Part shown: positions 1 through 64,000 of the stretch, piece after piece
Layout: the number at the start of each line of letters is the position of its first letter
How positions within the stretch are numbered: the stretch's first letter is position 1
Source of the DNA: Octopus sinensis
Taxonomy: Eukaryota
Length of the DNA: 64,000 nucleotides
Assembly: GCF_006345805.1 (NCBI RefSeq)
Contig: NC_043023.1
Location: 11,470,001 to 11,534,000, forward strand
Reading direction: 5' to 3'
The notes under the pieces: model-generated
Told to the model about the DNA's origin: nothing
The model's database searches: none
Seen by the model: only the letters and a program-made list of their open reading frames with translations
Translations under genes and position numbers: made by a program

Positions 1-59
1 TAAATGGATGACGGTGTTGATGTTGTAAGATTTGCAATGTTGAATTATTATGTCACTTA

Positions 60-485
60 ACTATTCTCTTTATCTCACTGCTTCTTTTTCTATTTCAGAA
101 TATCACATCATGTTGACGTAGAAGAAATTTCTTCATTCAGATGTACCTTTGATATTTTGATTGACTTTCATTAATTAAAGGAAGACCATGTATTCATAAG
201 GCACATTCATCAACGCATCAACCTCTTTATACAAATAAAATCTTCAATGAACGATGGGAAAATAATTCTTCTGGACAATGGAATTAACAGCAACATTTTT
301 GTTGTCTTCACTGTCTGGAATGTAGAGAAGATGATTGCTTTAAAGCTTAATTAAGCTTGCATAACTTTACAAAGGAGTTGATAGATTAGATATTAAGTAA
401 GATCCCAGATAAAAGAAACGGCATTGAATATAGTGACTCAACTGAACACAAACACATTCATATATATGGAAAAGACACTTTCATT
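60..485 (+). promoter_or_regulatory. 3' splice acceptor (CAG 96-98) and non-coding leader of exon 2, gene 1
   Basis: TTAAC branch-like motif, pyrimidine tract, then TTTCAG|AATATCAC. The same block precedes every ZNF ORF. Confidence 0.7.
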
Positions 486-494
486 GTGATATGT

Positions 495-1658
495 ATGATC
501 AATCATTCTCTCATGATGAATCATTTAACTAAAGCAAACAACCCTGATGTAGGAGAGAAACCATATCGCTGTAATATCTGTGGTAAATCATTCTCTCGAC
601 GTAGTCACCTTACTAGGCATAAACATATTCATACAGGAGAGAAACCCTATCATTGTGATATCTGTGGTGAATCATACTCTTATAATAGTCAGTTGATTAT
701 TCACAAACGTGTTCATACAGGAGAGAAGCCATATCATTGTGATATTTGTGGTAAATCCTTCTCTGGAAAGGGCGACTTGACTAAACACAAACGTGTTCAT
801 ACAGGAGAGAAGCCATTTCATTGTGACATTTGTGGTAAATCATTCTCTCGAAGTGGTGCCTTGCTTAAACACAAACGTACTCATACAGGAGAGAAGCCAT
901 ATCATTGTGATATCTGTGGTAAATCATTCTCCGAAAGGAATCATTTGACTCGCCACAAACGTATTCATACTGGAGAAAAGCCATATCATTGTGATATCTG
1001 TGGTAAATCATTCTCTCAAAGTGGGCATTTGACTAGACACAAATATACACATACAGGAGAAAAGCCATATGATTGTGATATTTGTGTTAAATTATTCAGT
1101 CAAAGGATTCCCTTGTCTGAACACAAACATATTCATACTGCAGAAAAACCATATGATTGTGATGTCTGTGCTAAATCATTCTCTAGAAGTGGGGACTTGA
1201 CTAAACACAAACGCATTCATACAGGAGAGAAGCCCTATCATTGTAATATCTGTGGTGAATCATTCTCTGAAAGCAGTACCTTGACTAAACACAAACGTAC
1301 ACATACAGGAGAAAAGCCATATCAGTGTGATATTTGTGGTAAATCGTTTTCTCGAAATAGCATTTTAACTTGTCACAAAAGTGTTCATACAGGAGAGAAT
1401 CCATACCCTTGTCATATCTGTGGTAAATCATTCTTTTATAAAAGTCACTTGACTACTCACATACGCATTCATACTGGGGAAAAACCATATCACTGTGATA
1501 TCTGTGGTAATACATTTTTTAGAAATAGCGATTTAACAAGTCACAAGCGTGTTCATACAGGAGAGAAGCCGTATCAGTGTGATGTCTGCGGTAAATCATT
1601 CTCTCAAAGTGGTACCTTAACTAAACACAAGTTGGTACATACAAGAGAGAAGCCATAA
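495..1658 (+). CDS. ZNF gene 1: poly-C2H2 zinc-finger protein, 13 fingers, intact ORF
   Basis: Repeated C-x2-C-x12-H-x3-H motifs with TGEKPY linkers. The ORF track starts at GTG 486; first ATG is 495, and the conserved M-N-x-L-T start is at 513/516. AATAAA at 1875-1880. Confidence 0.93.
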
Positions 1659-3004
1659 CTTTCCAATCCCTGTGGTAATTATTTTTGGGAAATGGTGTTT
1701 CAACTATACATGAACATTTCCATACTCTACAGAAACAGTCGTTGTGATATCTCTGGAAAATCTTTCTCTCGTAGATCTATCGTATATTTCTGGTGTTTAA
1801 ATGACTGTGTACAAGATGATGCCTAAGATTTCCATTTAAAAAGTGTGTTTTGAGATATATTTGATGTATACCATAATAAATACATTATGTACAGAATGCG
1901 AGGGAATGCAACTCTCGAAGCAAGAGTGAGGTATTTATGTATAGGAATGCCCTTGATGTAAATAAATATATACACACCCATACACACAGACATATATATA
2001 TATATAATAACAATTTAAGAAATAAAACATATGCATACATACATACATATATGTACGTACCTACATCTATATGTATATATACATGCATATATATATATAT
2101 ATATGAGTACAGGACACCACAAATAAACGTAGAACACAACGAGAAACGAAAAAATAAAACCAAACAAGGAAACGGACTTTTTTTAACAGTGAAAAAACAG
2201 AGTACAAGACAAACAATACAAGGAATACTCCCCTTCATCAGCTGCTCCTGTTTCGACTCAATGCATGTTTCGAAGTTAAGGGCAGAACACGATCCGGCTG
2301 AAGCAGTCCTTCCTGCAAAATGAATTAAATAAAATTCTTTTGCAGAGGGGTAAAAAAAGGAAAGAAAAAAAGTGACAAGAACAGGGCGTAAAAGCAATAC
2401 AAAAAAAAATACAGAACACATAAAGAATAAAAACAGGACAAGGAAACCAGCATTGAGGGCTTACATATTATGTTTTTGGATTTGGTTTCAAAGATTCTTT
2501 ATATGAGTTCGTGTATTGAAGCATTTTCTGTTGTGTCTGAGGAGACATATAGCATATAGAGATGCACATCCATTCATACAAATATGGTACATAGTTGGAA
2601 AACACACACACAAGGTGACAGAGGTGCGTACATATAAGTTTTCATGGAAAGTAGCTTGATCGCCAAAAGCATGAGCTTCGTAGCTAAAGGGGTCGGGTGA
2701 CCTGTGCTTTCCCTAGTGACCCCTCAAACCTCTGCTTTTCTTGTGTTTCAGTAGCATTTTTAAATGTTTCGATCAATAAACTTTGTATGCAATAATTCTA
2801 AAGTCTTTGTTGTTTGAAAATTATCCAGTTCTTCACAAAAAGTGGCCAGGTAGGGTAAATTACCAACTATGAAACGTACCTGGCTGGTGTAAACACCATA
2901 GTGACATCACTTACGCATCAGTTATTTTACAGGAACTAACATGGTGTCAAGTAATCCATAATAACACCATTTACTTGGAATGGATTTACAAATTTACTTT
3001 ACTG

Positions 3005-3187
3005 TCATCATCATCATTTAACGTCCGTTACACTACACTTACAGAGTGGTTGGTGTTAGGAAGGGCATTCAGCCGTAGAAACATTGCCAGATCAGACTGG
3101 GCCTGGTGCAGCCTTCTGGCTTCCCAGACCCCAGTTGAACCGTCTGACCCATGCTAGCATGGAAAGCGGACGCTAAATGATGATGAT
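3005..3187 (+). mobile_element. 5'-truncated 3' tail of the RTE LINE, with a short inverted tail piece at its 5' end
   Basis: Matches 19690-19856 and ends in (GAT)n. 3005-3027 is the reverse complement of the tail. Confidence 0.8.
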
Positions 3188-4408: not shown

Positions 4409-4811
4409 GGATCTTTTCGGTTTGAACGGCAGTTTTTTCTAGCGGTGTTATATGAAATTGTCACCCATAATTATGACCCTAGTATCGATCTATTGCATTT
4501 CAATCTATTTTAGGGTTAGGGGTGAGGGGAAGAGCATCTTTTTTTCTTCAGAAATGTAAATAAACCCAATCTGTTTCTTAAACGAGGGACATAGTCATAC
4601 GGCACAGAATGTTTTTTACCTCAATGGACATCACTGATTGGTTGAAATTGAAGAAAAAAAACAACAAATATCTTACAAACTATAGAATTTTGTCGATAAA
4701 GCCAAGAGAAAAAGATGTTTTATAAACACATTCTAGCAATATACGAAGTTTAAAAGTGTTTAGTTACGTGGAAATTATTTTTAAAAACTGCCGTTCAGAC
4801 CGGAAACACCC
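4409..4811 (+). mobile_element. MITE family 1 (GGATC TIR), complete copy
   Basis: TIR of about 29 bp, GGATCTTTTCGGTTTGAACGGCAGTTTTT, with a degenerate inverse at the right end. Internal TTAGGG motifs. No ORF. Confidence 0.8.
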
Positions 4812-5044
4812 AATATATGAGTACACTTTGTTCGAATAACTTGAAAAAACTTCCATGTGAAGTTATTGATGAAACGGGACAAATGTAGCCAGTCAGCAGA
4901 GCCATCAACTGGAGAATTCATAAAATACAATCGTTTAAAGGGAAATAACCTCTTCAACATTTGAACCGCGAAGCATCGAAAATATTAATCACGGTGATTA
5001 ATTAGCAGTTAATTAGTCATTGCTAATATCTGAATACGGTAAGT
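4812..5044 (+). promoter_or_regulatory. Putative non-coding exon 1 of gene 2, donor ACG|GTAAGT (intron starts 5039)
   Basis: Conserved block found co-oriented upstream of each ZNF gene. Predicted intron 5039-7489. Confidence 0.6.
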
Positions 5045-5529
5045 CGGCAAACATTGACGTTGATAATATTACTAATAACAATGTAAAATAATAGAATTAT
5101 GTGAACCTCTCGGTGTGACAGTGTTTCGAAGCAGAACCGTAACATTAGGAAAATATAATTTGCTCGTCTTAATTAATAATTTCCAAATCTTAATTAATAA
5201 TTTCCAAACTGAAATGTTGATCTGTTGTTTATGAAATCCTAAGACCGACGGTTACGTGTGATATAAAGCCAGTTATTTTATGAAAGGAGGGTAAAGCGGT
5301 GCAGTTAATTAGTAAAATGAGGGGAAATCGATTCAAGAATACCACATTAATTAATGAGACACATTAATTAACATTGTCCTGTTGTTAATTAGACACTGAT
5401 AAAACAGTAAGTGGAGACGGATTTGATCTTTGGTTATTTTAATTATAGGAATGATGATGGTATAACTACAGATTTCTGTCAAACTAAAGTCTTTGACCCA
5501 AGCAGAAAAGGAAAAAAAGAGAGGTAATG

Positions 5530-6560
5530 CAATAGGTGCAGAAAAAAAAAACGAATACGAAGGGGGGGGGGGGAATGCGCGCTGGTGAACGAGGGTCCGG
5601 GGAGAAGATTCGGAAAATTCACATCGTGAATGTTCCAAGTCTTCTCACCGATTCCCCGTTCGTCGGTGAAGTTTTTTTTTCTGTATATTTGTTTACTACA
5701 CATTATTTTACACTATTTTAGGCGTAACTTCGGTATACGGCCCGGAAATACCGGATACATTTCAAGAAAGTGTTTTTTTTATTATATATATATACGGGGG
5801 GTTAGGGTTAGGAGTGGGAGAAAAGTGTTTTTGTTATCTCCAGAAATGTAAAAAAAGCCACCGAAGGATTGCCCTATATTTTTTTTTTTCAATTTTTTGA
5901 CGGAGGTGGATGGTGTGCGGACTCGGATAATTCACGCGATCCAGCAACTCCACTTCGACACCCGGTCACAAAAATGAGGGAAAAATAGTGTAATAGGTGT
6001 AAAATAACGTGTAGTAAACGAATATGAAAAAAAATGCCCGCTGACGAACGGGGTGGAGGAGAGAACTTGGAAAATTCACATGGGGAATGTTCCAAGTTCT
6101 CTCACCAAATATTTGAACGGGTGTGGGTGGGGTTTGGACTCGGATAATTCGCGCATTTCAGTAACCCCACTTCGACACCCGGTCACAAAAAGGGAAAAAA
6201 AGTGTTAAATAACGTGTAATAAATGAATATGAAAAAAATATGCCTGCTGGGGAGAGGACTTGGAAAATTCACATCGAGAATGTTCGAAGTCCTCTCATCG
6301 ATTCGCCGTTTGTCGGCGAAAATTTTTTTCTTCATATTCGTTTACCATACATTATTTTACACCTAGTATACTATTTTTTTATGGGTGTGGGTGGGGTGCA
6401 GACTCGGAATATTTCACGTGATCCAGTAACTCCACTTCGTCACCCGGTCACAAAACTGAAAAAAAAAAAGAAAAAATAGTGTAATAGGTGTAAAATAACG
6501 TGTAGTAAACGAATATGAAAAAATAAATGGGTGCTGGCGACCGGGGGAGGGGCCAAAAAC
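5530..6560. repeat. Tandem array of 3-4 palindromic foldback units
   Basis: Hairpin centres near 5624, 6081 and 6274 (GGAAAATTCAC-loop-GxGAATGTTCC), flanked by inverted AT-rich arms. Confidence 0.65.
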
Positions 6561-7449
6561 CCGGACAACTCACACGATATTTTTCCCTAAAGAAAATGGA
6601 TATTCTTCCCAACCAGATGGTACTGGGTTCAGTCCCACTGCATGGCATCTTGGGCAAGTGAATTTTCTAAATCCTCAACCCCACCGTTTGCCAGAGAGCA
6701 TTTTTTGTTTTATATTCATTTTTTCTGCCCCCCCCCCCTCACGAATTTGGATGATCATAACTTGCAGAAAAATAGATATTTTTAAATGAAATTTTCTACG
6801 AAAATGTGTTATATCATGTAGATTCCGAATATATAATCTTTTTTTTTTTTTTGGTGCGGGGAAGAGTTTTAGGATGCTACATTGAGGCTAACTTTTTTGT
6901 GTAGCTTCGTTGGATTGCCTCAAGTTCTGAGATTAATATGACACTGATTGGTGACCATAGCTGAGAGCAATAGTCAAAGTGGCTTAGGACAAGTGTCCTC
7001 CAGAGGACCATCATGGTTTCCTAATCTCTTGTTCTAAAAGTTCTAAGAATCCATCCAGTCACTGCCAGTATTTCCTTGCCAATTTAGCAACATACACATT
7101 GAAGGATGCATTATTACTCATGTAAATGCCCAGGTCTTGCACTGACTGTGCCCCTGAAATTGCAAACCGAAAAGATCCTAAATTAGTTGTAAAGATTCAC
7201 AAATTGTTTGGTAAGTACCCTGCCAACTAAGCCATGCCACAGGTGAAACAAGTGAAAGCAAAGTAAAGAAAGAAAAAAAAGAGAAAACAGATAAATAATT
7301 AAAGAAATGTTGAAGCGATTCATCTATATACAGAATGTTTTAAATGTTTCAAAGCCTCAATGAATTCCGACCCAAGTGAGCATAGACATTAAATGGATGA
7401 CAGTGTTGATGTTGTAAGATTTGCAATGTTGAATTACTATGTCGTTTAA

Positions 7450-7677
7450 CAATTCTCTTTATCTCACTGCTTCTTTTTTTCTATTTCAGGATATCGCATC
7501 ATGTTGATGTTAAAGAAATTTCTTCATTCAGACATGCCTCTGGTATTTTTATTGACTACAGGAAGATGATATATTTATAAGGAGCATTCATCAATACATC
7601 AACCTCTTTATATAAAACATATTCATAGAAATTTAAAAGACACTTTCATTGTTGTATGTACGATAAATTATTCTCTC
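7450..7677 (+). promoter_or_regulatory. Splice acceptor (CAG 7487-7489) and shortened leader, gene 2
   Basis: Paralogous to 60-485 with an internal deletion. Confidence 0.65.
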
Positions 7678-8655
7678 ATGATGAGTCATATAACTAAAGG
7701 CAAAAACCCTGATAAAGTAGAGAAACCATATCAGTGTGATATCTGTGGTAAACCATTCTCTCAAAGTGGTCACTTGACTGTACACAAACGTACACATACA
7801 GGAGAGAAGCCATACCATTGTGATATCTGTGGTAAATCATTCTCTGAAAGCAGTACCTTGACTAAACACAAACGTACTCATACAGGGGAGAAGCCATATC
7901 ATTGCGATATTTGTGGTAAATCATTCTCTGAAAGTAAACATTTGACTCGTCACAAACATATTCATACAGGAGAAAAGCCACATCATTGTGATATCTGTGG
8001 TAAATCATTCTCTGAAAGTAGTAATTTGATTTGTCACAAACGTACACATACAGGTGAAAAGCCATATCATTGTGATATCTGTGGTAAATCCTTCGCTACA
8101 AATAATTATTTGACTTGTCACAAACATATACATACTGGAGAAAAGCCATATCATTGTGATATCTGTGATAAATCATTCTCTCGAAGTGGGGACTTGTCTA
8201 GACACAAACTTACACATACAGGTGAGAAGCCATACCATTGTGATATTTGTGGTAAATCATTCTCTTCTAGTAGCCATTTGATTCGTCACAAATGTATTCA
8301 TACTGGGGAGAAACCATTTCAGTGTGATATTTGTGGTAAATCGTTTTCTCGAAATAGCATTTTAACTTGTCACAAAAGTGTTCATACAGGAGAGAATCCA
8401 TACCCTTGTCATATCTGTGGTAAATCATTCTTTTATAATAGTCAGTTGACTTATCACTTACGTATTCACACTGAGGGAAAACCTCATCACTGTGATATCT
8501 GTGGTAAAACATTTTTTAGAAAAAGCGATTTAACTAGTCACAAACGTGTTCATACAGGAGAGAAGCCATTTGATTGTGATGTCTGTGGTAAATCATTCTC
8601 TCAAAGTGGTACCTTAACTAAACACAAGTTGGTACATACAAGAGAGAAGCCATAA
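7678..8655 (+). CDS. ZNF gene 2: poly-C2H2 protein, 11 fingers, intact ORF
   Basis: Canonical fingers and linkers. The last four fingers and the stop (HTREKP*) are paralogous to gene 1. Confidence 0.93.
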   Translation: MMSHITKGKNPDKVEKPYQCDICGKPFSQSGHLTVHKRTHTGEKPYHCDICGKSFSESSTLTKHKRTHTGEKPYHCDICGKSFSESKHLTRHKHIHTGEKPHHCDICGKSFSESSNLICHKRTHTGEKPYHCDICGKSFATNNYLTCHKHIHTGEKPYHCDICDKSFSRSGDLSRHKLTHTGEKPYHCDICGKSFSSSSHLIRHKCIHTGEKPFQCDICGKSFSRNSILTCHKSVHTGENPYPCHICGKSFFYNSQLTYHLRIHTEGKPHHCDICGKTFFRKSDLTSHKRVHTGEKPFDCDVCGKSFSQSGTLTKHKLVHTREKP

Positions 8656-8832
8656 CATTCCAATACTTGTGGTAATTATTTTTGGGGAAATGGTGTTTTA
8701 ACTATACTTCTCCTGACCCCAACTTCTTCTCTTTATTCCTACGTAATTTCTCTCTTCACTGACATCCCCCTCCACCTACAAAGACTTTCTCACTTTCCTG
8801 AGCATCAAACTAATACACCTGCTCATTGATTA

Positions 8833-9260
8833 TACACCTGTCATTTTTTTTTCTGTAAAGTTCAAGTAATTTTTATTGAACTTCTATTTCAGAAAATAAA
8901 AATGACAGCCCCTATTCTTACTAACGAAATGAAAAGGCATGCTGTGATTGTGGCTTTGATTGCTAATCATGGTGATTTAGAAATTTCTTGTTTTCTAAAA
9001 GTTGCAAGATCTTTCGTTCACAAGATTCGGTGTGAGTTAGAAAAAGAAGATGGAAATGTATCACCTGTCTCAGAACGTAAAAACATTCCAAGCGCTCTGA
9101 TTCTATCAGGACACCTGAATTTATTCAGGAAGTTAAGCAAAACATTAGAGACAATCCAGGAAAATCAATGAGGTCAATCGCAAAAAAATTTTGTGTGTCG
9201 GAAAAAACGATCAGAAATATTATGCATGAAGACATCAAATACAAATCTTGCAAGAAGGAA
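8833..9260 (+). mobile_element. Tc1/mariner-superfamily (maT/DD37D-like) transposase 5' fragment, frameshifted and truncated
   Basis: ORF 8902-9171 continues in a shifted frame as KHSKRSDSIRTPEFIQEVKQNIRDNPGKSMRSIAKKFCVSEKTIRNIMHEDIKYKS, typical of the second HTH of these transposases. No DDD region is present. Confidence 0.65.
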
Positions 9261-9299
9261 GAACAAAAAAAACTGATTTGTCAGATCCAAAAGACTTTT

Positions 9300-9830
9300 G
9301 AATATCTAAATAGATCAACACAACGATGGCTTTGATGGTGCTGGATTTTTGAGGAATTTGTTATGAGAGAATAAAGGAATGGGAATAAGGAATAAAAGTT
9401 TTAAGTGATATTGATTTTGTCTTTGTTGTGTTTTCATCATCAACATCATACATTACCATCCATTTTCTTTGCAGGCATGGATGGTAAAGTGTGACAGGTG
9501 TTGGCAAGCCAGAGTGCTTCTCCAGGTTACACTCAGATTTGGCTTGTTTTCTTTGGCTGTATGCCCTTAAGATACGAGGCATATTCTATTAATATGCCTG
9601 TTCAAGTATCGTAATAGCATGAAACTAGTAGTAGCCCTTTCAATTATGTATTTAATTTGATATATGTATGTATGTGTGTGAACATGATGTCGGTCTGATA
9701 ACTAAAATAAATGTATGCAAATCTTGGATTTCAAGCATATTTCTGAATGGGGCAGTAGCATAGACTCCCTTTTGCAGACAAAAAACCTTGAAACTTTTCA
9801 CATGTATGGAGCAAGATAAGAACTTGTCAA
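9300..9830 (+). other. Conserved ZNF 3' region (gene 2 copy)
   Basis: Paralogous to 15880-16100, 35280-35830 (rc) and 60160-60700. Confidence 0.7.
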
Positions 9831-10044: not shown

Positions 10045-10254
10045 GTATTCACCTCAATAGACGTCATTGATTGGTTGAAATTGCCGAAATGCAAGAAATT
10101 TGTCAACAAATAGCTTATAAACTACAGAATTTTTCTCAAGAAAGCCAAGAGAAAAAGATGTTTTATGTAACACATTCTACCAGTATACGAAGTTTAAAAG
10201 TGTTTATTTACAAAGAAATTATTTTAAAAATCTGCCGGTCAAAGTGAAAAGGTA
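10045..10254 (+). mobile_element. MITE family 1, right-hand part
   Basis: Matches 4610-4811. Confidence 0.7.
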
Positions 10255-10269
10255 CCAGGCTTGTTTTCG

Positions 10270-10502
10270 AGGCTACAGCTCCCTATAAAAACTCAGCTTT
10301 TCTGGTGAAAATTTGAAAACTCTTCAAGATGATGTTCACACGATAGGACAGTAGAGTCATCTGTTGGAGAATAAAAGAAATACAACCAGATAAAGGGAAA
10401 TAACTTCTACTACACTCCAAACCACGTGGTCTCTGTAAATTATTAATTAAGGTGCTTAATTACTGATCACTGATTCGTTGTTTATATCTGAATACGGTAA
10501 GT
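10270..10502 (+). promoter_or_regulatory. Putative exon 1 of gene 3, donor ACG|GTAAGT (intron starts 10497)
   Basis: Paralog of 4812-5044. Predicted intron 10497-14076. Confidence 0.6.
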
Positions 10503-11747
10503 TGTCAAAGATTTACTTTAAGGCTGTAATGGTGATAATACTAGTACTAATAATAATGTAATAATAGGATTATGTGAACCTCTTGTTCGTAAAGTAATTA
10601 TTTCGAAGCTGAAACTTAACAAAATTAGGAAAATATATTTGCTCGTCTTAATTAATAATTTCCAAACTGAAATGTTGATCTGTTGTTTAGGAAAGCCTAC
10701 AATCGACTGTTACATGTGATATAAAGGAAATTAACGGGTAAAATGGAAGTAATATGGCATATTTAATTAGTAAAATTAGAGGAAGAATACCACATTAATT
10801 AATGCTGTCCTGTTGTTTATGAGGCATTGATAATAGGATTTACTTCAATGTTATATTAATAATAGTGATGATGATGATGGTTTCAAATTTTGGCCCAAGG
10901 CCAGCAATCTTTCGTGCGAGTGAGGGGAGTAGAATACATGGGACTTAGTATTTCCCGAAAGGGATGAAGGCAAAGCCGACCTCGGCCGTATTTAAACTCA
11001 GGACTTTCCGCCGAAGTCGACATTTCACTTAAATTCGTTTCTGAGTCCATAAATAACAATGAAGATAATGATAAGGGCCTGTAATTTGGAGGGGAGACGT
11101 AATTCTATTGCTTGGACCCTAGTTCTTTTTATTGCTTTTGATTTCATTGACCTCGAAAGGATGACAGGCAAAGTGAACCTCGGTGGAATTTGAACTTTCA
11201 GAGTAAAGACGGACGAGTGTTACATATGATATGAAGTAAATTGATAAAAGATTTGGTAGATTAACGGTAATTCAGAATTGGTAGATGTTCCTTACATTTA
11301 ATTACTGCATAATGAGAGAAAAGGTGCCTAATTAATTTTGATAAAATAACTAAAAATCTGTGGCGTATAAGTACATAAACGTGCCCCGCTGACTTTGTTT
11401 TCTTCTCACTTGCTGAAAAATCGTTTTTTGTTTTTTCTAATGGAATCTCCTATGACTATATTTTAGAAGATGACAGTTTTAATACTTTTCAGACGGTGTA
11501 GTTTGTGATTATATCAGAATTTGTTGTGGAAACCATTGTTCTGAGCCAGTTTAATGAAGGAGAGTTTCACATGATTCAAAAGCCTCAGTTTTGTTTCCTC
11601 AATCACCAACATCGGATTTCAAGCAGTGAGTGAGGGGTGGGCGGAAAAACACACATTGATATATATGTGTATATGTATATAGGATCGGCTTTTTTTCAAA
11701 TTCCATTTACCAAATCCACTCACAAGACTTTGGTCAGCCCAAGCGTG

Positions 11748-12113
11748 GGTACTACTTGAGAACAGTGGTCCCGGTGCGCGTACTCGCGCATCCGCGCCAG
11801 CTAGTCGATCCTTACTTTGTGTTTTTGTGTTATTTACATTGTTTAAGGCGACCCTTCGGTATAGGTACACACGCGACTTTGTTTACATTTCTGAAGATAA
11901 CAGAAACCCTTTTCTCCGAACCCTAACCCTAACCTCTCATATATATAAAAGAAAAAAAAACTTTCTTCAAATGTATCCAGTACTTATACCGAAGTTACGC
12001 TAAAAATTATTTACTTTGCTAGGTAGTCGTAGGATCGACTACTTACAACTAGCTAGCGCAGATACGCGACTGCGAGTGTGCGTGAAACGGGACCACTGTT
12101 TGCTAGGAGTACC
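11748..12113. mobile_element. MITE family 2 (GGTACT...AGTACC long TIRs), inserted in a SINE
   Basis: Direct repeat CCAAGCGTG at 11739-11747 and 12114-12122 (TSD, 9 or 8 bp). Long imperfect TIRs. Internal CCCTAA repeats. Confidence 0.85.
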
Positions 12114-14516: not shown

Positions 14517-15709
<1,193 letters not shown>

Positions 15710-47982: not shown

Positions 47983-48029
47983 ATCAGGTCATCCCAAAAG
48001 TTCTGTCCGAATTTTGAATAAAGAAAACA

Positions 48030-49319: not shown

Positions 49320-51500
<2,181 letters not shown>

Positions 51501-51912
51501 TCTGGGTTTCAGGGGTCAGAATCCATTGAGGAATTGAAAGCTTTACAACATTCTGTATATAGATGAATCGCTTCAACATTTCACAAATTATTTATCTGTT
51601 TTCTTTCTCTTCTAGGTAAATAAATCATTTTTTAAAACAATGTATATAATTTTTTTACACAAATAAAATATTTTTCGAACAGTTAATCCTCGTTGCCGGA
51701 ATTTTAACAAAAAAAAAAAAAAAAAAATCAAAGGCGATTTATTAGTACAAACCTCAATATTGGTAATTGTTAATACGCAAAGTAAATAATTTTTTAAAGT
51801 AAGTAAATATATTATTTTTATAAACAAATTAAGGTTAGGGTTAAAAAGTCGTTGTAGGATCGACTACTTACGACAAGCCACTGGTCGCAGGTAGTACCGT
51901 AAAACTTTGTCA

Positions 51913-52330
51913 ATTTACCGTATTCACATGTAAACAACGAATCAGAGTTCAGTAATTAAGCACCTTAATTAATAATTTACTTGGATCTCGGTTTAAGTGT
52001 TGTAGAAGTTATTTCCCTTTATACGATTGTATTTCTATAATTCTCTAATAGATGGCTCTACTGAGCGATTGGTTTCGTTTAAGGGTTATTCTTTGTCCCT
52101 TTCTGTCAACAACTTCCCCTTCAAATTCTTTCAAATTCTCACCAGATTATTTTAAGGAAGTGTACTCACATATTCTACTCTGCGGCCGTTTCCCAGCACA
52201 CGACATGGCATCATCGCAAATACTGTAGGAATAAAGACGTCTTCAACCACTGGCTTCCCCACGTCATGCCGTCGTACTTCCGGTCCCTTCCTGACGTCAT
52301 TTCCTCTCCCTTCTAATTATTCTGCTTCCT
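51913..52330 (-). promoter_or_regulatory. Putative promoter (ACTTCCGG 52276-52283; TGACGTCA 52292-52299) and exon 1 of gene 8, donor ACG|GTAAAT (intron starts 51918)
   Basis: Conserved block. Predicted intron of about 0.5 kb. Confidence 0.6.
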
Positions 52331-52802: not shown

Positions 52803-53081
52803 TAGAATATACAAGTAACTTTATTAAAATAATCTGGTGAGAATTTTTAAAAACTTGAAGATGGAGTTATTCACAGAAAGGGACAAAGTTAAAAAAACAC
52901 GGAAGGAATCCAACAATTCAGTAGCGCTCTCTATTGGAGAATTAAGGAAATACAATTATATCAAGGGGAAACAACTTCTTCACCACATCAACCACGAGAC
53001 CAAAATAGCTAATTAGGGAAGTTAATTAGGGAGGTTAATTACCGATCACTGAGTCACTGTTTATTTGTGAATTCGGTAAGT
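52803..53081 (+). promoter_or_regulatory. Putative exon 1 of gene 9, donor TCG|GTAAGT (intron starts 53076)
   Basis: Conserved block. Predicted intron 53076-54662. Confidence 0.6.
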
Positions 53082-53513
53082 TGACAAATATTTACTTTAA
53101 GGCTGTAATAGTGTTGATAATACTACTAATAATAAGGTAAATAATAGAATTATGTTTCCAAGCGGGAACCTGACAATAATTAGGAAAATATATTTGCTCG
53201 TCTTAATTAATAATTTCCAAACTGAAATGTTGATTTGTTGTTTATAAAATACTGTGACCGACTGTTACATGTGATATAAAGTAAATTAGTTGGTAAAAAT
53301 GAATGTAATGTAGCATAATTAATTAGTAAAATGAGAAGAAACCGATTGAAGAATACCACGTTAATTAATTCTGTCCCGTTGTTAATTAGGCATTGATAAA
53401 ACGGTAAGTTGATGAAGATTTGCTTTAAGGTTATATTAATAATCGTAATGATGGTTTAAAATTTTGACCCAGGGCCATCAGTCAACCTCGGCTGTATTTG
53501 AACCCAAGACTCT

Positions 53514-53920
53514 GGGATCTTTTCGGTTTGAACGGCAGTTTTTTAAAATAATTTCCACGTAACTAAACACTTTTAAACTTCGTATACTGGTAGAATGTGT
53601 TTATAAAACATCTTTTTCTCTTGGCTTTCTTGAGAAAATTCTATAGTCTGTCAGATGTTCTTTTTTCTTCAATTTCTGCAATTTCAACCAATCAATGACG
53701 TCTATTGAGGTGAAAACATTATGTGCCGTATGATAAGTCCCTAGTTTAAGAAACAGATTGGGTTTATTTACATTTCTAAAGAAAATAAGATACCCTTCCC
53801 CCCACCCCTAACCCTAAAACAGATTGAAATGCAATAGATCGATACTAGGGTCATAATTATGGGTGACAATTTCATATGACACCGGTAGAAAAAAATTGCC
53901 GTTCAAAATGAAAAGATCCC
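53514..53920 (-). mobile_element. MITE family 1, complete copy in reverse orientation
   Basis: Both TIRs present. Imperfect flanking repeat CCAAGACT(C)T / CCAAGACTT is a possible 9-bp TSD. Confidence 0.8.
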
Positions 53921-54609
53921 CCAAGACTTACTGTCGAGATCGACACTGTCTTTCATTTTTTTCAGGGTGAGTAAAAAATAATAATAATCAAGGTGCCGCG
54001 CAGTGGGAATGAACTCAGAACATAGCGATAGGCGAAATACCACTCAGCATTTCATGCAGCGTGCTAATGACTCTGCCAGTAAATAATGGAATTATGTGAA
54101 CCCTTCGAAGTTACTGCAATCTGTGAAAATGCATAGAAAGATTGAGAAAATATGCTCCCTTGTCTTAGATATATCAAAAATGAATTTTTCTGAAATGTAT
54201 GAGGAAGGTAGGAGTAGGGCCGACCAAAGCCTTGTGAGTGGATTTCGTAGACGGAAACTGAAAGAAGCCCTTTGTATATGTGTGTATATATATATATGTG
54301 TTTGTGTGTCTGTGTTTGTCTCCCCAACATCGCTTGAAAACAGATGCTGGTGTGTTTACATCCCTGTAACTTAGCGGTTCAGTAAAAGCGACCGATAGAA
54401 TAAGTAACTAGGCTTCCAAACAATAAGTCCTGGGGTCGATTTGCTTGACTAAAAGGCGGTGCTCCAGCATAGCCACAGTCAAATGACTGAAACAAGTAAA
54501 AGTTGTGTAGGTATGCCAGTCTTTCAACACTTCAATGAACTCCGACCCTTGCGAACATTGACATTAAACGGATGACAGTATTAATGTTGTAAAATTTGCA
54601 ATGTTGAAT

Positions 54610-55047
54610 TATTATGTCACTTAACTATTCTCTTTATCTCACTGTTTCTTTTCCTCTTTCAGAATATCACATCTTGTTGACGTAAAAGAAATCTTGTTGT
54701 TCAGATGTGACTTATGATTTTTTTATGGACTTTCATCAACTAAAGGAAGATGATATATTTATAAGGAGCCTTCATCAATACATCAACCTTTTTATACTGA
54801 TATAATCTATGACAAACAACAGCAAAATATTTTTCTTGTCTTCACTGTCTGGAATGTAGAGGAGGTGATTGCTTTACAAGTTTGTGTAACTTTACGAAGG
54901 ACTTGACAGTTTTCACCTGCTAATTTAGATATTAAGTAAGATCACAGATGAATGAAACATAGCATTAAATTATTCCCTGAAAATACTAACTGAACTGAAC
55001 ACAAACATATTCATAGAAAAGAAAAAAACAATATTTTTGTGATATAT
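54610..55047 (+). promoter_or_regulatory. Acceptor (CAG 54660-54662) and leader, gene 9
   Basis: Paralogous block. Confidence 0.7.
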
Positions 55048-56803
55048 ATGAGAAATTATTCTCTCAGAATGAATAATTTAATAAAATCTAAAAACACTGA
55101 TACAAAAGAGAAACCATATTCCTGTGATGTCTGTGGAAAATCATTTTCTCTAAGAAGTAACTTGATTAGACACAGATATATTCATACAGGTGAGAAGCCA
55201 TATCATTGTGATATCTGTGGGAAATCATTCCCTGCAAACGGTGACTTGACGATTCACAAGCGTGTTCATACTGGGGAAAAACCATATCACTGTGATATCT
55301 GTGGTAAATCATTTTCTGGAAGTAATGACTTGACTAAACACCAGCGCATTCATACAGGAGATAAACCATATCGTTGTGATATCTGTGGCAAATCCTTTTC
55401 TCTAAATAGCGCTTTAACTAGTCACAAATATACATATGGGAGAGATGCCATATCATTGTGATATCTGTGGTAAATCATTCTCTCAAAGAAGTAACTTGAC
55501 TGTTCACAGACGTATTCATACGGGTGAGAAGCCATATCATTGTGATGTCTGTGGAAAATCATTTTCTCGGAGAAATCACTTGTCTGTTCACAAACATACA
55601 CATACAGGAGAAAAACCGTGTCATTGCGATACCTGTGGTAAATCATTCTCTTGTAATAGTCAGTTGACTACTCATAGATGTATTCATACTGGTGAAAAAC
55701 CATATCCCTGCGATTTATGTGGTAAATCATTTTCTCAAACTCATGCTTTAACTAGACACAAACGTGTTCATACAGGTGAGAAGCCATATCATTGTGATAT
55801 CTGTGGGAAATCATTCTCTGCAAACGGTAGCTTGACGATTCACAAGCGTGTTCATACTGGGGAAAAACCATATCACTGTGATATCTGTGGTAGATCATTT
55901 TCTGGAAGTAATGACTTGACTAAACACCAGCGCATTCATACAGGAGATAAACCATATCGTTGTGATATCTGTGGCAAATCCTTTTCTCTAAATAGCGCTT
56001 TAACTAGTCACAAATATATACATACGGGAGAGATGCCATATCGTTGTGATATCTGTGGTAAATCATTCTCTGGAAATAGTCAATTGACTAGTCACAGACG
56101 TATTCACACAGGTGAGAAACCATATCGCTGTGATATCTGTGGTAAATCATTTTCTGTAAATAGCACTTTAACTAAACACAAGCGTATTCATACAGGTGAG
56201 AAGCCATATCAATGTATTATCTGCGGTAAATCATTTTCTGAAAATGGAGCTTTAACTCGTCACAAACGTATTCATACTGGGGAAAAACCATATCAGTGTG
56301 ATATCTGTGACAAATCATTTTCCGAAAGTAGCAGTGTAACTAGTCACAAGCGTATTCATACTGGGGAAAAACCATATCAGTGTGATATCTGTGGCAAATC
56401 ATTTTCCGAAAGTAGCAGTGTAACTAGTCACAAGCGTATTCATACTGGGGAAAAACCATATCAGTGTGATATCTGTGGCAAATCATTTTCCGAAAGTAGC
56501 AGTGTAACTAGTCACAAGCGTATTCATACAGGAGAGAAGCCACATCGCTGTGATATCTGTGGTGGGTCATTTTCTAATGCCAGTTACATGAAAAGGCACA
56601 AACGTATTCATAGAGCTGAGAAGCCATATCACTGTGATACATGTGGCAAGTCATTCTCTAAATGTAGTGTCTTAACTAAACACCAGCGTATTCACACAGG
56701 AGAGAAACCATATCATTGTGATATCTGTGGTAAATCATTCTCTTGTAGTAGCCACCTGTCTAAACATAAACGTATTCATACAGGAGAGAAGTCATCATTG
56801 TAA
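55048..56803 (+). CDS. ZNF gene 9: 20 fingers, 2-bp deletion near 55432; out-of-frame fingers follow to ~57040
   Basis: ORFs 55039-55461 and 55436-56803. The intact duplicate at ~56010 shows the missing AT. Confidence 0.87.
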
Positions 56804-57215
56804 TATCTGTGGCAAAACATTCTCTCAAAGAAATGGCTTAACTAAACACAAGCACGTTCATACAGGAGAGAAATTATATCCTTGAGATATCTGTGGTTAA
56901 CCATTCTCTTATAATACTCACTTGACTAATCATAAACATATTCATACTGGGCGAAAAACCACATCACTGTGATATCTGTGGTGAATAATTCTTTCAAAAT
57001 GGCCACTTCAGTACACATGTGAGTATTCACACACAACTGTAACTGTACCAGTATTGAAATTTATTACAACACGACAACAATAACTTCTATTTTTCTCTGC
57101 TAAAAGGCGTTTTCTTTATATCTCTTCAAATTTGATGTTATCAACTTCAAATTCATGAATACGAACCTGAATGCTGTGTATATATGGAAATATATCAACA
57201 CAACAAAGCCTTTGA

Positions 57216-57338
<123 letters not shown>

Positions 57339-57794
57339 TGACTGTATAAGTATTGAAATTTGTTACAACATGCCTAAAATTACTTCTAGTTTTTCTGCAA
57401 AGAGACAGGGATTTTTTTTATCTCTTCAAATTTCATGTTATCAACTTCAATTTCATCAATGTCAACATCTAATTCAGCAAAGACTTTAATTTCTGAAGAT
57501 GGTCATGCTGGAGTTTTGAGGAATTTGTTATGAGAAAATAAAGAAATGGGAATAATGAATAAAAACTGAATTAAACTGAAATTGGTTTTGTCTATTAACT
57601 TTCATCATTGTCGTCATTTTCATCATCATCATCCTTCAGCGATAGCTTTTCTTTATATGTTGTCATGGGTGGCACAGTGTGACATGAGCTGGTAAACCAT
57701 AATGCTGCACTAGGTTCCAGTCTGATTTGTTTGGGTTTCTTTGGATGTATTCTCCTAATGCTAACCAGTTTACAGTTTATGCTGTGTGCTTTAT

Positions 57795-59960: not shown

Positions 59961-60159
59961 CTAATATGTGCACCATATTCTTGCTATCATCACTTCCAAA
60001 AAGCGTGGCTGGTTCTACACAAGCCTTCAACACTCAAATCAAATATTTCTGTTTGGGGTTTCTGACAACTTACATTTATTCATTCAATATGGCAGAGCTT
60101 CAAGTTGTGAAAATCAAAAGGAGAGTGAAAGTGATAAGACATGTATATTTCGTCATGTA

Positions 60160-60960
60160 TGTATCTAAATATATCAACACAGCAGTCACTTTGATTTCTG
60201 AAGATGATTGTGCTGGATTTTTGAGGAATTTGTTATAAGAGAATAAAGGAATGGGAATAAGGAATAAAAGTTTTAAGTGACATTAATTTTGTCTTTGTTG
60301 TGCTTTCTTCATTATCATCATCATCCTTTAATGTTTTCTATGCAGGATCAGGTGGAAAGTCTTACAAGGGCTGTCAAGCCAGAGTGCTGTTCCAGATTGC
60401 AGTCAGATTTGGCTTGCTTTCTTTGGCTGTATGCCCTTAAGATACATTGTGTATTTTATAAATATGCCTGTTCATGTATCATAACAGCATGAAACTAGTA
60501 GTAGCTCTCTCGGTTATGTATTTAATTTGATATGTGTGTGTGTTTATGAAAACAGTGACAGTCTGATGACTAAAATAAGTGTATACAAATCTCATATTTT
60601 GAGTGTATTCATGTCTGGGGCAGAAGCATGGACTCCCTTTTACAGAGCAATATAAAAAAACTTGAAACTTTTCACATGTGCTGTTTGTGCAACAAAATAG
60701 CAAGATAAGACATCAAATGTCAAAACCTTAGAAATATGTGGTATGTCCAGCATCCAAAGCGTGTTGATGAGAATTCAGTGCAGATGGTTAGGACATATTT
60801 TTTAAATGAAAAATGGCTGCATTAAAAAAAATTCTTCTTTATGGCCAAAAAATGGAGGGATATCATGGCAGAGGAAGACCTGTCCTTAGGTATAAGGATG
60901 AGCTGAAGCAATCAGTAAAATCTCTAGAGTTTGATTTGACATGTTGGGGAAAGTCATTAC
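60160..60960 (+). other. Orphan copy of the ZNF 3' region with no finger array upstream
   Basis: Colinear with the reverse complement of 34620-35830, minus the LINE-tail insertion. Confidence 0.7.
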
Positions 60961-61949: not shown

Positions 61950-62330
61950 TTGGATTAGCAAGAGGTTATCCATTGATGTGTCACACTCTTGGGGAAAGGT
62001 ATGCCTTGCAATGGTGGATTGTGGGCCAGGGTGGATGGCGTCATGGAGAGAAATCGGGGTGGTAATGCTGCGGAAGGGCTGCAATCAGTGTGTTTGGAAT
62101 GGGGGCTTGTAGATGAGCTATTAATGGACAACAGTACAGCTTTTTGCACCATTGTTCAATTGAATTTAAGGCTGAGAGGCAACGGATCTACCGCATGGAG
62201 GCAGTCTTCGAGTTTGTTCTGCAGACAGCCATATTCTGGTACGAATGGGGACACTGCAGCAGCTGGAGGTGGAAGGGGTTACATTGGTACAGGCCATAGA
62301 CAAAGTAGGGTGAAGCTCCCAAATGCGTGT
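61950..62330 (+). mobile_element. Degenerate Ty3/Gypsy-type integrase fragment
   Basis: Shifted frames give W..KRLSIDVSH...LAMVDCGPG...WREI and LEWGLVDELLMDNSTAF...GNG, resembling the integrase D,D region. Confidence 0.6.
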
Positions 62331-62599
62331 GTGGGACATTCCCAATCACCGATAACAGACGAACTGCACACAGAAATGTCGCTGTGGGTAGCTATTAAGT
62401 TGGTCTGCAGAGAAGGGCCATCCGGTTAGGTACGAGAAGGATCTGACAATTTATATCAGTGATTCTCAACTGGGGTCCACACATCCCCCTCAGGGTCCTA
62501 TATAAGACTGAGGGGGATTACACAACAAAATATCATGGAAAACAATAATTATATTTTAAGGGTATTCGAAAAAATTTTGCTTTAGATCTTAAGTATTGG

Positions 62600-63312
62600 G
62601 TTAGGGTTATAAAACATCTTTTTCTCTTGGCTTTATAGAGAAAATTCTATGGTTTGTAAGATATTTGTTGTTTTTTTTGCTTCAATTTCTGCAATTTCAA
62701 CCAATCAATGACGTCTATTAAGGTGACAACATTCAGTGCCATATGAATATGTCCCTCATTCAAGAAACAGATTGGGTTTATTTACATTTCTGAAGAAAAA
62801 AAGATACCCGCCTCTAACCCTAACCCTAAAACAGATTGAAATGCAATAGATCAGGCGCAGGAGTGGCTGTGTGGTAAGTAGCTTGTTTACCAACCACATG
62901 GTTCCGGGTTCAGTCCCACTGCGTGGCACCTTGGGCAAGTGTCTTCTACTACAGCCTCGGGCTATAGTGAGTGGATTTGGTAGACGGAAACTGAAAGAAG
63001 CCCGTCGTATATATATGTATGTATGTTTCTGTGTCTGTGTCCCCCTAGCATTGCTTGACAACCGATGCTAGTGTGTTTATGTCCCCGTCAATTAGCGGTT
63101 CGGCAAAAAGAGATCGATAGAATAAGTACTGGGCTTACAAAAGAATAAGTCTCGGGGTCGAGTTGCTCGATTAAAGGCGGTGCTCCAGCATGGCCGTAGT
63201 CAAATGACTGAAACAAGTAAAAGAAAGAGAGATCGATACTAGAGTCATAATTATGGGTGACAATTTCATATGACACCGCTAGAAAAAACTGCCGTTCAAA
63301 CCGAAAAGATCC
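62600..63312 (-). mobile_element. MITE family 1 (reverse) interrupted by a family-A SINE
   Basis: MITE sequence resumes after the SINE. AGATC is repeated at both junctions. Confidence 0.75.
62854..63230 (+). mobile_element. Family-A tRNA-derived SINE, near full length
   Basis: A box TGGCTGTGTGG, B box GGTTCAGTCCC, central (TA)n/(TG)n and an A-rich tail. Other copies at 11620-12200, 12590-12790, 13190-13540, 20802-20970 and 41030-41213. Confidence 0.8.
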
Positions 63313-63558
63313 TACGTGAGTACTCTTCGTTAAAATAATCTGGTGTAAATTTGAAAAATTCTTGAAGGCGAAGTGGTTGACAGAAAATCACTGGAACGAA
63401 ATGAACAGCCAGTGAAGCCATCTATTGGAGAATTAAAGAAATACAATGTTATGAAGGGAAGTAACTTCTACAAAACTTGTTTTACGAGCTCCGAGTTAAA
63501 CGTTAAGGTGCTTAATTAGCGATCACTGACTCGTTGTTCATATCTGGATACGGTAAGT
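63313..63558 (+). promoter_or_regulatory. Putative exon 1 of a tenth ZNF gene lying beyond the window, donor ACG|GTAAGT (intron starts 63553)
   Basis: Conserved exon-1 block with no partner ORF inside the window. Confidence 0.55.
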
Positions 63559-64000
63559 TGAGAAATATTCACTTGAAGGCTATAATGGTGTTAATACTAC
63601 TGATTATAATGTAAATAATAGAATTATTTCGAAGCGAAAACATAACAAATTGGGGAAATATATTTCAGTGTCTTAAATAATAAATTCCAAACCGAAATAT
63701 TGATTTGTTGCTTATAAAAACCTATGAACTGCTGTTGCATGTGATATAAAGGAAATTAATTGGTAAAATGAGTGTTAAGTGGTGTAATTATTAAAATGAG
63801 ACGAAACCGTTTGCAGAATACCACATAGCGAACAGTGGTCCCGGTGCGCGCAGTCGCGGATCCGCGCTAGCTAGTCGTGACAAGTCGATCCTACAACGAC
63901 TACCTAGCAAAGTAAATAAAACACAAAATAAAAAAATTTTGATCCTTTTGGTTTGAACGGCAGTTTTTAACATAATTTCAAGTAACTAAAAATGTTAAAC

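What the first reader, a model, noticed from the sequence alone, without database searches (positions are those of the whole stretch)
1..64000. The cluster is built from one duplicated two-exon cassette with interchangeable donors and acceptors
Seen: an AT-rich block that looks like an anonymous repeat occurs nine times. It is always upstream of and co-oriented with a ZNF ORF, and always contains a strong donor at the same position (introns start at 5039, 10497, 27668, 34141, 42277, 47752, 51918, 53076, 63553). A conserved branch/pyrimidine/TTTCAG acceptor sits ~200-600 nt before each ORF or remnant (98, 7489, 14076, 25420, 32119, 38846, 45531, 51398, 54662). They pair one-to-one in eight cases, one of them across the gap. 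Inference: promoter, non-coding exon 1, intron and single coding exon are duplicated as a unit. Because exon 1 is non-coding and the sites are equivalent, an upstream exon 1 could splice to any downstream exon 2 in the five-gene minus run. That would decouple promoter choice from finger array, loosely like clustered protocadherins. Established: octopus C2H2 cluster expansion is known. I do not know of this architecture being described.
Basis: partly seen in the sequence, partly recalled or inferred. Interest (0 to 1): 0.8.

Follow-up and report, generated by a model that had tools for sequence, protein, structure and literature searches.

The report
Tandem octopus zinc-finger genes, 5'UTR intron
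The window holds nine duplicated octopus zinc-finger genes, each apparently a complete two-exon gene with its own non-coding first exon, intron and poly(A) site; this is ordinary tandem gene duplication, not a protocadherin-like splicing system.

Summary
All nine donor strings (8 GTAAGT, 1 GTAAAT) and nine acceptor strings (Y-tract TTTCAG|RAYATC) are at the stated coordinates. They are co-oriented with nine C2H2 arrays and pair in eight cases. The gap lies inside one intron, and its flanks are collinear with a sister intron.

Exon 1 cannot be coding. A conserved ATG lies 192-442 nt after each acceptor, in a 5'UTR made of decayed fingers.

The same acceptor core sits 342-428 nt before the annotated ATG of four other ZNF genes in O. 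vulgaris and O. bimaculoides. An O. vulgaris gene model splices exactly at it. This suggests a real, constrained splice site.

Three results limit the interpretation:
- Exon-1 and exon-2 halves have discordant similarity (for example 70% against 95%), so the cassette has been reshuffled.
- The sequence 5' of exon 1 falls into three unrelated classes, so no common promoter is shown.
- Seven units end in a conserved double AATAAA plus GT-rich poly(A) site, and no exon is shared between units.

Cross-unit splicing is therefore untested and structurally disfavoured. No transcript data could be reached. Ordinary; low interest.

The parts
97..1658 (+). U1: acceptor AG at 97-98. Exon 2 starts at 99, conserved ATG at 516, stop at 1658. 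13 fingers, intact. Its exon 1 lies off the window.
4784..9415 (+). U2: exon-1 block 4784-5038, intron 5039-7489, exon 2 from 7490. ATG 7681, stop 8655, double AATAAA at 9370/9391. Intact, 11 fingers. Its 5'UTR is shortened to 191 nt by a deletion.
10242..15995 (+). U3: exon-1 block 10242-10496, intron 10497-14076, exon 2 from 14077. ATG 14517, stop 15581, poly(A) signals at 15951/15972. Intact, 10 fingers.
23092..27923 (-). U4: exon-1 block 27923-27669 (donor ACA|GTAAGT), intron 27668-25420, exon 2 from 25419, ATG 24992. The finger array runs to 23092 and is broken by frameshifts. Its exon-2 half is an inverted duplicate of U3's (13503-15652 matches 25977-23834 at 85%).
30150..34396 (-). U5: exon-1 block 34396-34142, intron 34141-32119, exon 2 from 32118. 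ATG 31714, stop 30572, poly(A) signal at 30198. Intact, 11 fingers. The intron holds two further intact donor copies at 33785 and 33443.
35690..42532 (-). U6: exon-1 block 42532-42278, with a CRE/ETS motif at 42640-42615 just upstream. Intron 42277-38846 contains the N gap 40905-41004. Exon 2 from 38845, ATG 38443. The leader and array are frameshifted (ORFs 38351-37023 and 37086-36205). Poly(A) signal at about 35732; the first hexamer reads AATAAG.
42930..48007 (-). U7: exon-1 block 48007-47753, intron 47752-45531, exon 2 from 45530, ATG 45089. The ORF decays after one finger; a residual 9-finger ORF lies at 44116-43229. Poly(A) signal at 42974. Pseudogene-like.
49040..52286 (-). U8: CRE/ETS motif 52286-52261, exon-1 block 52173-51919 (donor GTAAAT), short intron 51918-51398 (520 nt), exon 2 from 51397, ATG 51027. 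A frameshift follows after 2-3 fingers, then a 15-finger ORF to 49320. Poly(A) signal at 49081. Head-to-head with U9.
52821..57580 (+). U9: exon-1 block 52821-53075, intron 53076-54662 with a second donor copy at 53404, exon 2 from 54663, ATG 55069. A frameshift follows after about 4 fingers (at the 5th, near 55.4 kb); the 16-finger ORF is 55436-56803. Poly(A) signals at 57537/57558.
63298..64000 (+). U10: exon-1 block 63298-63552 with donor at 63553. The intron runs off the window end.
60150..60680 (+). Orphan copy of the 3'UTR/poly(A) block with no finger array in front of it. Relic of a further unit.

Best explanation
This is a cluster of nine (plus one relic) tandemly and invertedly duplicated C2H2 zinc-finger genes of an octopod genome. 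The proteins are finger arrays only.

Each gene appears to be a self-contained two-exon transcription unit with these parts, in order:
1. A ~255-nt AT-rich non-coding first exon that ends in a consensus 5' splice site.
2. A 0.5-3.6-kb intron filled with transposon fragments.
3. A conserved 3' splice site.
4. One long terminal exon. It carries 190-440 nt of 5'UTR made of decayed, frame-shifted fingers, then a conserved ATG, then the finger array. In the seven units where it could be identified, a 3'UTR follows, ending in two AATAAA signals and a GT-rich downstream element.

The cluster grew by ordinary segmental duplication of whole genes. Later gene conversion or unequal crossover within introns gave the exon-1 half and the exon-2 half separate histories. 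About half of the copies now carry frameshifts.

Shown: the anatomy, the conservation pattern, the non-coding status of exon 1, and the poly(A) signals. Inferred: that the GT and AG sites are actually spliced to each other, and where transcription starts.
For: - Site strings and homology blocks.
- Pure C2H2 arrays with an 84-nt period and no effector domain.
- No frame crosses the exon-1/exon-2 junction into the main ORF.
- A conserved ATG is present in 9/9 units. Its leader [17 protein letters not shown] is itself half of a decayed finger.
- The acceptor core TATTTCAG|RAYATC occurs at 13 sites in 146 kb of three genomes. All are co-oriented with and 280-770 nt 5' of a ZNF ORF with at least 4 fingers, and there are none elsewhere.
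- In the four external copies, identity to the window consensus is 82% at -10..-1 and 70% at +1..+10. It falls to 25-55% in the more distant bins (random expectation 27%). The annotated ATG lies 342-428 nt downstream although the leader peptides are unrelated.
- The last intron of the O. vulgaris model P0175 runs from GG|GTAAGT (L002 19602) exactly to this AG| (L002 21088). That annotation used Iso-Seq and RNA-seq.
- A homologous exon-1 block in O. bimaculoides (L003 8640-8751) lies 900 nt 5' of such an acceptor.
- Conserved double AATAAA plus GT-rich element in 7 units.
- TE control: the window's dispersed repeats hit the external loci at 3-16 places on both strands. The exon-1 block hits only the one ZNF-upstream place.
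- Discordant similarity matrices for the two halves.
Against: - No transcript, junction read or TSS datum could be reached. No window ORF is on record in the gene collection, and no retrocopy junction was found.
- Within the window, exon 1 is no better conserved than the adjacent intron (73% against 70%; 75-76% around the acceptor). Conservation inside the cluster therefore proves only common descent.
- The one external exon-1 homologue has GC, not GT, at the donor. The other external ZNF genes with the acceptor show no homologous exon 1.
- The predicted 5'UTR would carry 5-11 upstream ATGs, which is a heavy load.
- The evidence type behind the O. vulgaris junction is not known.
Confidence: 0.72

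Rival explanations
1. Because donors and acceptors are equivalent and exon 1 is non-coding, an upstream exon 1 is regularly spliced to downstream exon 2s in the same-strand run. This would uncouple promoter choice from finger array, in a protocadherin-like way.
For: Donor and acceptor cores are nearly identical between units. Spacing from a poly(A) site to the next exon-1 block can be only about 440-830 nt. One O. vulgaris gene model (P0175) joins a degenerate upstream finger array across 8.5 kb to the next gene's first exon and acceptor.
Against: In the seven units where it could be identified, exon 2 is a terminal exon with a conserved double AATAAA plus GT-rich poly(A) site. No exon is shared between units. 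The nearest acceptor to each donor is its own. The P0175 model also contains a non-canonical 'intron' inside the finger array, and it comes from a pipeline that mixes ab initio and protein-alignment evidence. Cephalopod protocadherins themselves do not use this mechanism (PMC9068888).
Confidence: 0.06
2. The exon-1 block is not an exon. It is a repeat or regulatory segment carried along with the duplications. Its GT is conserved only by descent, and the ZNF transcripts start elsewhere or use other first exons.
For: Intron sequence 3' of the donor is as conserved as the putative exon. The donor module is itself tandemly repeated in two introns. A SINE-like element abuts the block in five units. 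External ZNF genes keep the acceptor but not this exon 1. The O. bimaculoides homologue has GC at the donor.
Against: All 12 donor copies keep an intact GTAAGT or GTAAAT. AG|GCAAGT is the usual form of functional GC-AG donors (general knowledge). The block is always co-oriented with and upstream of an acceptor. It is not dispersed in 82 kb of other octopus DNA, whereas true repeats are. A conserved acceptor requires some upstream donor.
Confidence: 0.17
3. The cluster is largely a graveyard of pseudogenes. The uniform architecture reflects recent copying rather than function.
For: Five of nine units are frameshifted or decayed after the conserved ATG. There is one relic 3' end without an array. 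Conservation across unit segments is uniform at 70-76%.
Against: Four units are intact from the ATG to the stop. Copies are 25-30% diverged, yet all keep the donor, acceptor, ATG and poly(A) cores. Frameshifts may be assembly errors in a gapped assembly. This reading is compatible with the best explanation rather than opposed to it.
Confidence: 0.05

Closest known systems
Vertebrate tandem poly-zinc-finger gene clusters (KRAB-ZNF, and FiNZ-ZNF of cyprinid fish; PMC10547256)
   Same: Lineage-specific tandem and inverted duplication of whole genes. The finger array is encoded in one long exon. There are upstream small exon(s) with a 5'UTR intron. There are many pseudogenised copies, gene conversion between paralogues, and TE-rich surroundings.
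   Different: No KRAB, SCAN or FiNZ effector exon; Pfam finds fingers only. The protein starts inside a decayed finger. The 5'UTR of the finger exon is itself decayed finger sequence.
Cephalopod C2H2 expansions (Albertin 2015, as cited in PMC9068888; PMC12513265)
   Same: Same gene family and genomic habit. The external loci from O. vulgaris and O. bimaculoides carry about 70%-identical arrays and the same acceptor core.
   Different: The papers I could read describe numbers, phylogeny and expression. PMC12513265 contains none of the words exon, intron, UTR, promoter or splicing. The two-exon architecture is probably implicit in public gene models rather than discussed in the literature.
Clustered protocadherins of vertebrates
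   Same: Only that there are many similar first exons in a row, each presumably with its own promoter.
   Different: Protocadherin variable exons are coding and all splice to shared constant exons at the 3' end of the cluster. Here the first exons are non-coding, and nothing is shared. In seven units the second exon ends in a conserved poly(A) site of its own.
Read-through ('conjoined') transcripts between neighbouring tandem genes
   Same: If any cross-unit splicing occurs here, it would be of this sporadic kind: failure to terminate, then splicing from an upstream donor to the next gene's acceptor.
   Different: That is a by-product of tandem arrangement, not a regulated diversity system. 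It was not observed here.

Membership tests
Tandem C2H2 poly-zinc-finger gene cluster | Several adjacent paralogous genes, each with a tandem array of canonical C2H2 fingers joined by TGEKP-type linkers | tested here: met
   Nine arrays with an 84-nt period. Pfam zf-C2H2 and zf-H2C2_2 E-values are 1e-56 to 1e-142.
Tandem C2H2 poly-zinc-finger gene cluster | Whole finger array encoded in a single exon | tested here: met
   Uninterrupted ORFs run from the ATG to the stop in U1, U2, U3 and U5. The annotated CDS of two O. bimaculoides relatives are single-exon.
Tandem C2H2 poly-zinc-finger gene cluster | Upstream non-coding exon joined by a canonical GT-AG intron | tested here: inconclusive
   The sites are present and conserved, and the acceptor is used in an O. 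vulgaris model. No transcript evidence exists for the window itself.
KRAB/SCAN/FiNZ-type ZNF genes | N-terminal effector domain encoded on separate exon(s) | tested here: not met
   Pfam finds only finger families. The leader is 17 residues of decayed finger. No frame enters the ORF from exon 1.
Protocadherin-type variable/constant exon cluster | Shared constant exons downstream, to which every variable first exon splices | tested here: not met
   No shared exon exists. Exon 2 is a terminal exon, and in seven units it ends in a conserved AATAAA-N15-AATAAA plus GT-rich site.
Protocadherin-type variable/constant exon cluster | Variable first exons are coding and carry the diversity | tested here: not met
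   Exon 1 is non-coding. The diversity lies in exon 2.
Protocadherin-type variable/constant exon cluster | Stochastic choice among a conserved promoter element in front of each first exon | tested here: inconclusive
   The sequence 5' of the block falls into three unrelated classes. The CRE/ETS motif is present in only 2-3 units. Promoter activity is not testable here.
Dispersed transposable element (the 'ordinary TE' alternative for the exon-1 block) | Copies scattered in both orientations irrespective of genes | tested here: not met
   All window copies are co-oriented with a downstream acceptor. There is 1 place in 82 kb of external octopus DNA, also ZNF-upstream, against 3-16 places on both strands for true repeats. 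The sample is small, and no genome-wide scan was possible.
Dispersed transposable element (the 'ordinary TE' alternative for the exon-1 block) | Structural hallmarks of a SINE or other known element | tested here: inconclusive
   No tRNA and no Rfam family were found anywhere in the window. TIRs, TSDs and A-tails were not examined systematically. The block abuts a separate SINE-like element in 5 units.

The most novel reading that the evidence does not exclude
In the five-gene minus-strand run, transcription from an upstream unit reads through its poly(A) site. Its non-coding exon 1 is then spliced to a downstream unit's acceptor at a regulated, appreciable frequency, so that one promoter can drive several different finger arrays.
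Probability: 0.05. Interest if true: 0.6.

Novelty: new member of a known kind. Interest (0 to 1): 0.22.

Why it matters
As it stands, this is a careful anatomy of an ordinary tandem zinc-finger gene cluster. It is useful mainly for annotation. It gives the true start codon, a 5'UTR intron, the poly(A) site, and which copies are broken.

Two modest points go beyond that:
- The splice acceptor, and its roughly 400-nt distance to the start codon, are older than the subfamilies. They are shared between octopus species, so they can serve as a genome-wide marker for this ZNF superfamily.
- The two halves of each gene have different histories. This documents active gene conversion or crossover inside the cluster.

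Only if cross-unit splicing were shown would the locus bear on how cephalopods regulate their very large ZNF repertoire.

Tried and rejected
- Exact look-up of five window ORF variants in the gene-position collection found nothing on record. The source assembly and its gene models could not be identified.
- A full-length protein search was swamped by long vertebrate ZNFs.
- A leader-only search returned only fragments of 76 aa or less, none with the leader. Hit lengths in all three searches stopped at about 1.75x the query length, which suggests a hidden cap.
- A search with the leader plus four fingers gave the two usable octopus proteins. No transcript contig turned up among the 276 returned proteins. 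P0245 is not on record.
- Rfam and tRNA scans were negative. This rules out a known snRNA, SL RNA or tRNA-SINE identity for the block.
- A possible second small intron inside the exon-2 5'UTR (GAG|GTGATT ... TTTAG) was rejected, because the GT is present in only 4 of 9 units (reading).
- A search for a processed retrocopy preserving the spliced junction found none.
- The poly(A) block has no homologue in the external loci.
- The O. vulgaris exon that splices to the conserved acceptor is not homologous to the window's exon 1.
- The 2015 octopus genome paper is not held in the library.


Full report
**What is in the window**

Nine arrays of C2H2 fingers with an 84-nt period lie at 551-1657, 7712-8659, 14548-15589, 23070-24961, 30465-31683, 36195-38390, 43270-44246, 49363-50996 and 55100-56990. 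The first three are on the + strand, the next five on the - strand, and the last on the + strand. Pfam finds only zinc-finger families in them and no effector domain. An intact LINE ORF (endonuclease plus reverse transcriptase, 16168-18801) sits at the boundary between the + and - runs. Array DNA is about 70% identical to ZNF genes in Octopus vulgaris and O. bimaculoides loci, and dispersed repeats are shared with both. The window is therefore octopod. The exact species and assembly could not be identified.

**Check of the observation**

Every donor coordinate is the G of a GT in the context CG|GTAAGTTGACAAAG. Two exceptions: 51918 reads GTAAAT, and 27668 has A at -1. Every acceptor coordinate is the G of an AG in the context CTYAC, pyrimidine tract, TTTCAG|RAYATC. 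The blocks are clearly homologous. About 255 nt 5' of the donor aligns in all nine copies, and about 190 nt 5' of the acceptor aligns and runs continuously into the fingers. Eight pairs form, with introns of 520-3579 nt. GGTAAGT occurs 19 times against 6.9 expected, and ten of these are in the blocks. Three additional intact donor copies (33785-, 33443-, 53404+) come from a tandemly repeated module with a period of about 330-355 nt inside two introns.

**The gap**

N 40905-41004 lies within the intron of the 42277->38846 unit. In gene orientation, the intron's first 1064 nt align to positions 1-844 of the 53076->54662 intron. Its last 552 nt align to positions 1032-1586. The gap sits in a ~1.8-kb stretch in between that corresponds to only ~190 nt of that intron. 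Pairing across the gap is thus the simplest reading. The true length of the gap, and whether anything else hides in it, is unknown.

**Coding status**

In all eight pairs, each of the three frames meets a stop shortly before or after the junction, long before the main ORF. Exon 1 therefore cannot encode part of the protein. All nine units keep an ATG in the context ATAATGA, 370-442 nt after the acceptor (192 nt in U2, which has a deletion). The leader [17 protein letters not shown] is the C-terminal half of a decayed finger, and the sequence between the acceptor and the ATG consists of frame-shifted relic fingers. From that ATG, U1, U2, U3 and U5 are intact. U4, U6, U8 and U9 are frameshifted, and U7 is decayed. 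Some of these breaks could be assembly errors. The predicted spliced leader carries 5-11 upstream ATGs. I cannot explain this, and it may mean poor translation.

**Is the acceptor real?**

Within the window, conservation says little. Mean pairwise identity is 73% for exon 1, 70% for the first 100 nt of intron, 75% for the last 190 nt of intron and 76% for the exon-2 UTR.

The informative comparison is external. The 14-nt core TATTTCAG|RAYATC (at most 1 mismatch) occurs at 13 places in 146 kb from three genomes. These are the nine window sites plus L002 21080(+), L003 3437(-), L003 9569(+) and L003 30794(-). Each is co-oriented with and 280-770 nt upstream of an ORF with at least four fingers, and there is no hit anywhere else. 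In those four diverged copies, identity to the window consensus is 82% in the 10 nt before the AG and 70% in the 10 nt after. In the more distant bins it falls to 25-55%, against a random expectation of 27%. Among the four themselves, identity peaks at 92% just before the AG. The annotated start codons lie 342-428 nt downstream, although the leader peptides are unrelated.

The last intron of the O. vulgaris model P0175 runs from GG|GTAAGT at L002 19602 precisely to this AG| at 21088. That annotation drew on Iso-Seq and RNA-seq, but also on protein alignments and ab initio predictors (PMC10700109). The junction is therefore suggestive rather than proven.

**Is exon 1 real?**

Here the evidence is weaker. 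A homologous block exists once in the external DNA (L003 8640-8751, nhmmer E=4e-15). It lies 900 nt upstream of and co-oriented with an acceptor, but it reads AG|GCAAGT at the donor. The other external genes that have the acceptor lack a homologous exon 1. The O. vulgaris exon that is spliced to the acceptor is unrelated in sequence. So the acceptor is ancient, and first exons are subfamily-specific.

Against the 'ordinary TE' alternative, three bona fide dispersed repeats from the window hit the 82 kb of external DNA at 4, 3 and 16 places on both strands. The exon-1 block hits only that one ZNF-upstream place. Rfam and tRNA scans are empty. This is a small sample, not a genome-wide test.

**'Duplicated as a unit'**

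The order and orientation of parts is the same in every unit, so whole-gene duplication is the root process. The two halves nevertheless do not share a tree:
- U3 and U4 have acceptor blocks 94-96% identical but exon-1 blocks 70% identical.
- U5 and U6 are 89-95% against 74%.
- U5 and U9 are closest on the exon-1 side (89%).

Across all pairs, the donor-side and acceptor-side identities are uncorrelated (Spearman -0.21). U3/U4 is an inverted duplication (13503-15652 matches 25977-23834 at 85%) that stops within the intron. Gene conversion or crossover within introns has evidently reshuffled the halves.

Nor is a common promoter visible. Immediately 5' of the block there is a SINE-like element in five units, a CRE/ETS-bearing sequence in three (clear in U6 and U8, degenerate in U5), and a MITE-like element in one.

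**Cross-unit splicing**

Seven units end with the same 3' block: GAGAGAATAAAGGAATGGGAATAAGGAATAAAAG, followed by TTGATTTTGTCTTTGTTGTGTTTTC. After this block, homology stops. It lies 239-734 nt past the stop codon, and it is a textbook poly(A) signal with a downstream GT-rich element. Each cassette is therefore a complete gene with its own terminator, and no exon is shared between units.

For an upstream exon 1 to reach a downstream exon 2, transcription must read through this site and splicing must skip a whole terminal exon. That can happen sporadically between tandem genes. The P0175 model does join a degenerate upstream array to the next gene's exons. But the same model contains a non-canonical 'intron' within the array, and its evidence type is unknown. 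The topology is the reverse of clustered protocadherins, and cephalopod protocadherins do not themselves use variable-exon splicing (PMC9068888).

**Comparison and novelty**

The closest known kind is the tandem poly-ZNF gene cluster (vertebrate KZNF, fish FiNZ-ZNF; PMC10547256). This cluster differs in lacking any effector exon and in having a 5'UTR made of decayed fingers. The cephalopod C2H2 literature I could read does not discuss exon or UTR structure. The description is therefore new in detail, but it is a new member of a known kind.

**Verdict**

- Observation: confirmed.
- Two-exon gene architecture: likely (about 0.7).
- 'Unit' duplication: only partly right.
- Protocadherin-like decoupling: unsupported and structurally disfavoured (about 0.05).
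- Interest: low.

Noticed in passing
window 16168-18801 (+): Uninterrupted 877-aa ORF of a non-LTR retrotransposon (Exo_endo_phos_2, RVT_1, weak PHD). It sits exactly where the + run of ZNF genes meets the - run. It may mark, or have mediated, the inversion.
   Followed up: partly
window 19240-19680; 20441-20803; 21609-21700: A 63-nt tandem repeat (7 copies, 96% identical, GC-rich) is followed by long (AT)n tracts. These account for the GC spike and trough at 18-22 kb and for the overlapping spurious ORFs at 19101-19830.
   Followed up: no
window 60150-60680 (+), with 59207-59509: An orphan copy of the unit's 3'UTR/poly(A) block is preceded by the SINE-like element and intron fragments. It has no exon-1 block or finger array. 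It appears to be a collapsed tenth or eleventh unit.
   Followed up: partly
window 34141/33785/33443 (-) and 53076/53404 (+): The donor-bearing ~100-nt module is tandemly repeated, about 330-355 nt apart, inside two introns. This gives two or three intact GTAAGT donors per gene, which are potential alternative 5' splice sites.
   Followed up: partly
window 13503-15652 (+) and 23834-25977 (-): U3 and U4 form an inverted duplication (85% over 2.2 kb; 94-96% around the acceptor). It covers exon 2 and about 570 nt of intron but not exon 1.
   Followed up: yes
window 42615-42640 (-) and 52261-52286 (-): An identical 26-nt motif, GGACCGGAAGT.CGACGGCATGACGT (ETS-like plus CRE-like), lies about 90 nt 5' of the exon-1 block of U6 and U8 only. 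It is a candidate core promoter. U8 and U9 are head-to-head, with about 650 nt between their exon-1 blocks.
   Followed up: partly
window 10037-10257 (reference copy); 15 places in the window: A ~215-nt SINE-like dispersed repeat occurs on both strands, and also in the O. vulgaris and O. bimaculoides loci. Its 3' end abuts the exon-1 block at nearly the same point in five units.
   Followed up: partly
exon-2 5'UTRs, e.g. window 14077-14516 and 31715-32118: The predicted spliced leaders contain 5-11 upstream ATGs. One is a conserved mini-ORF (ATG TTG ACG TAA) 11 nt after the acceptor. Its effect on translation is unknown.
   Followed up: no
L002 10001-21184 (O. vulgaris OX597842.1): Public gene model P0175 fuses a degenerate finger array to the next ZNF gene's first exon and the first 96 nt of its exon 2. 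It uses at least one non-GT 'intron' inside the array, so it is probably a mis-fused model.
   Followed up: partly
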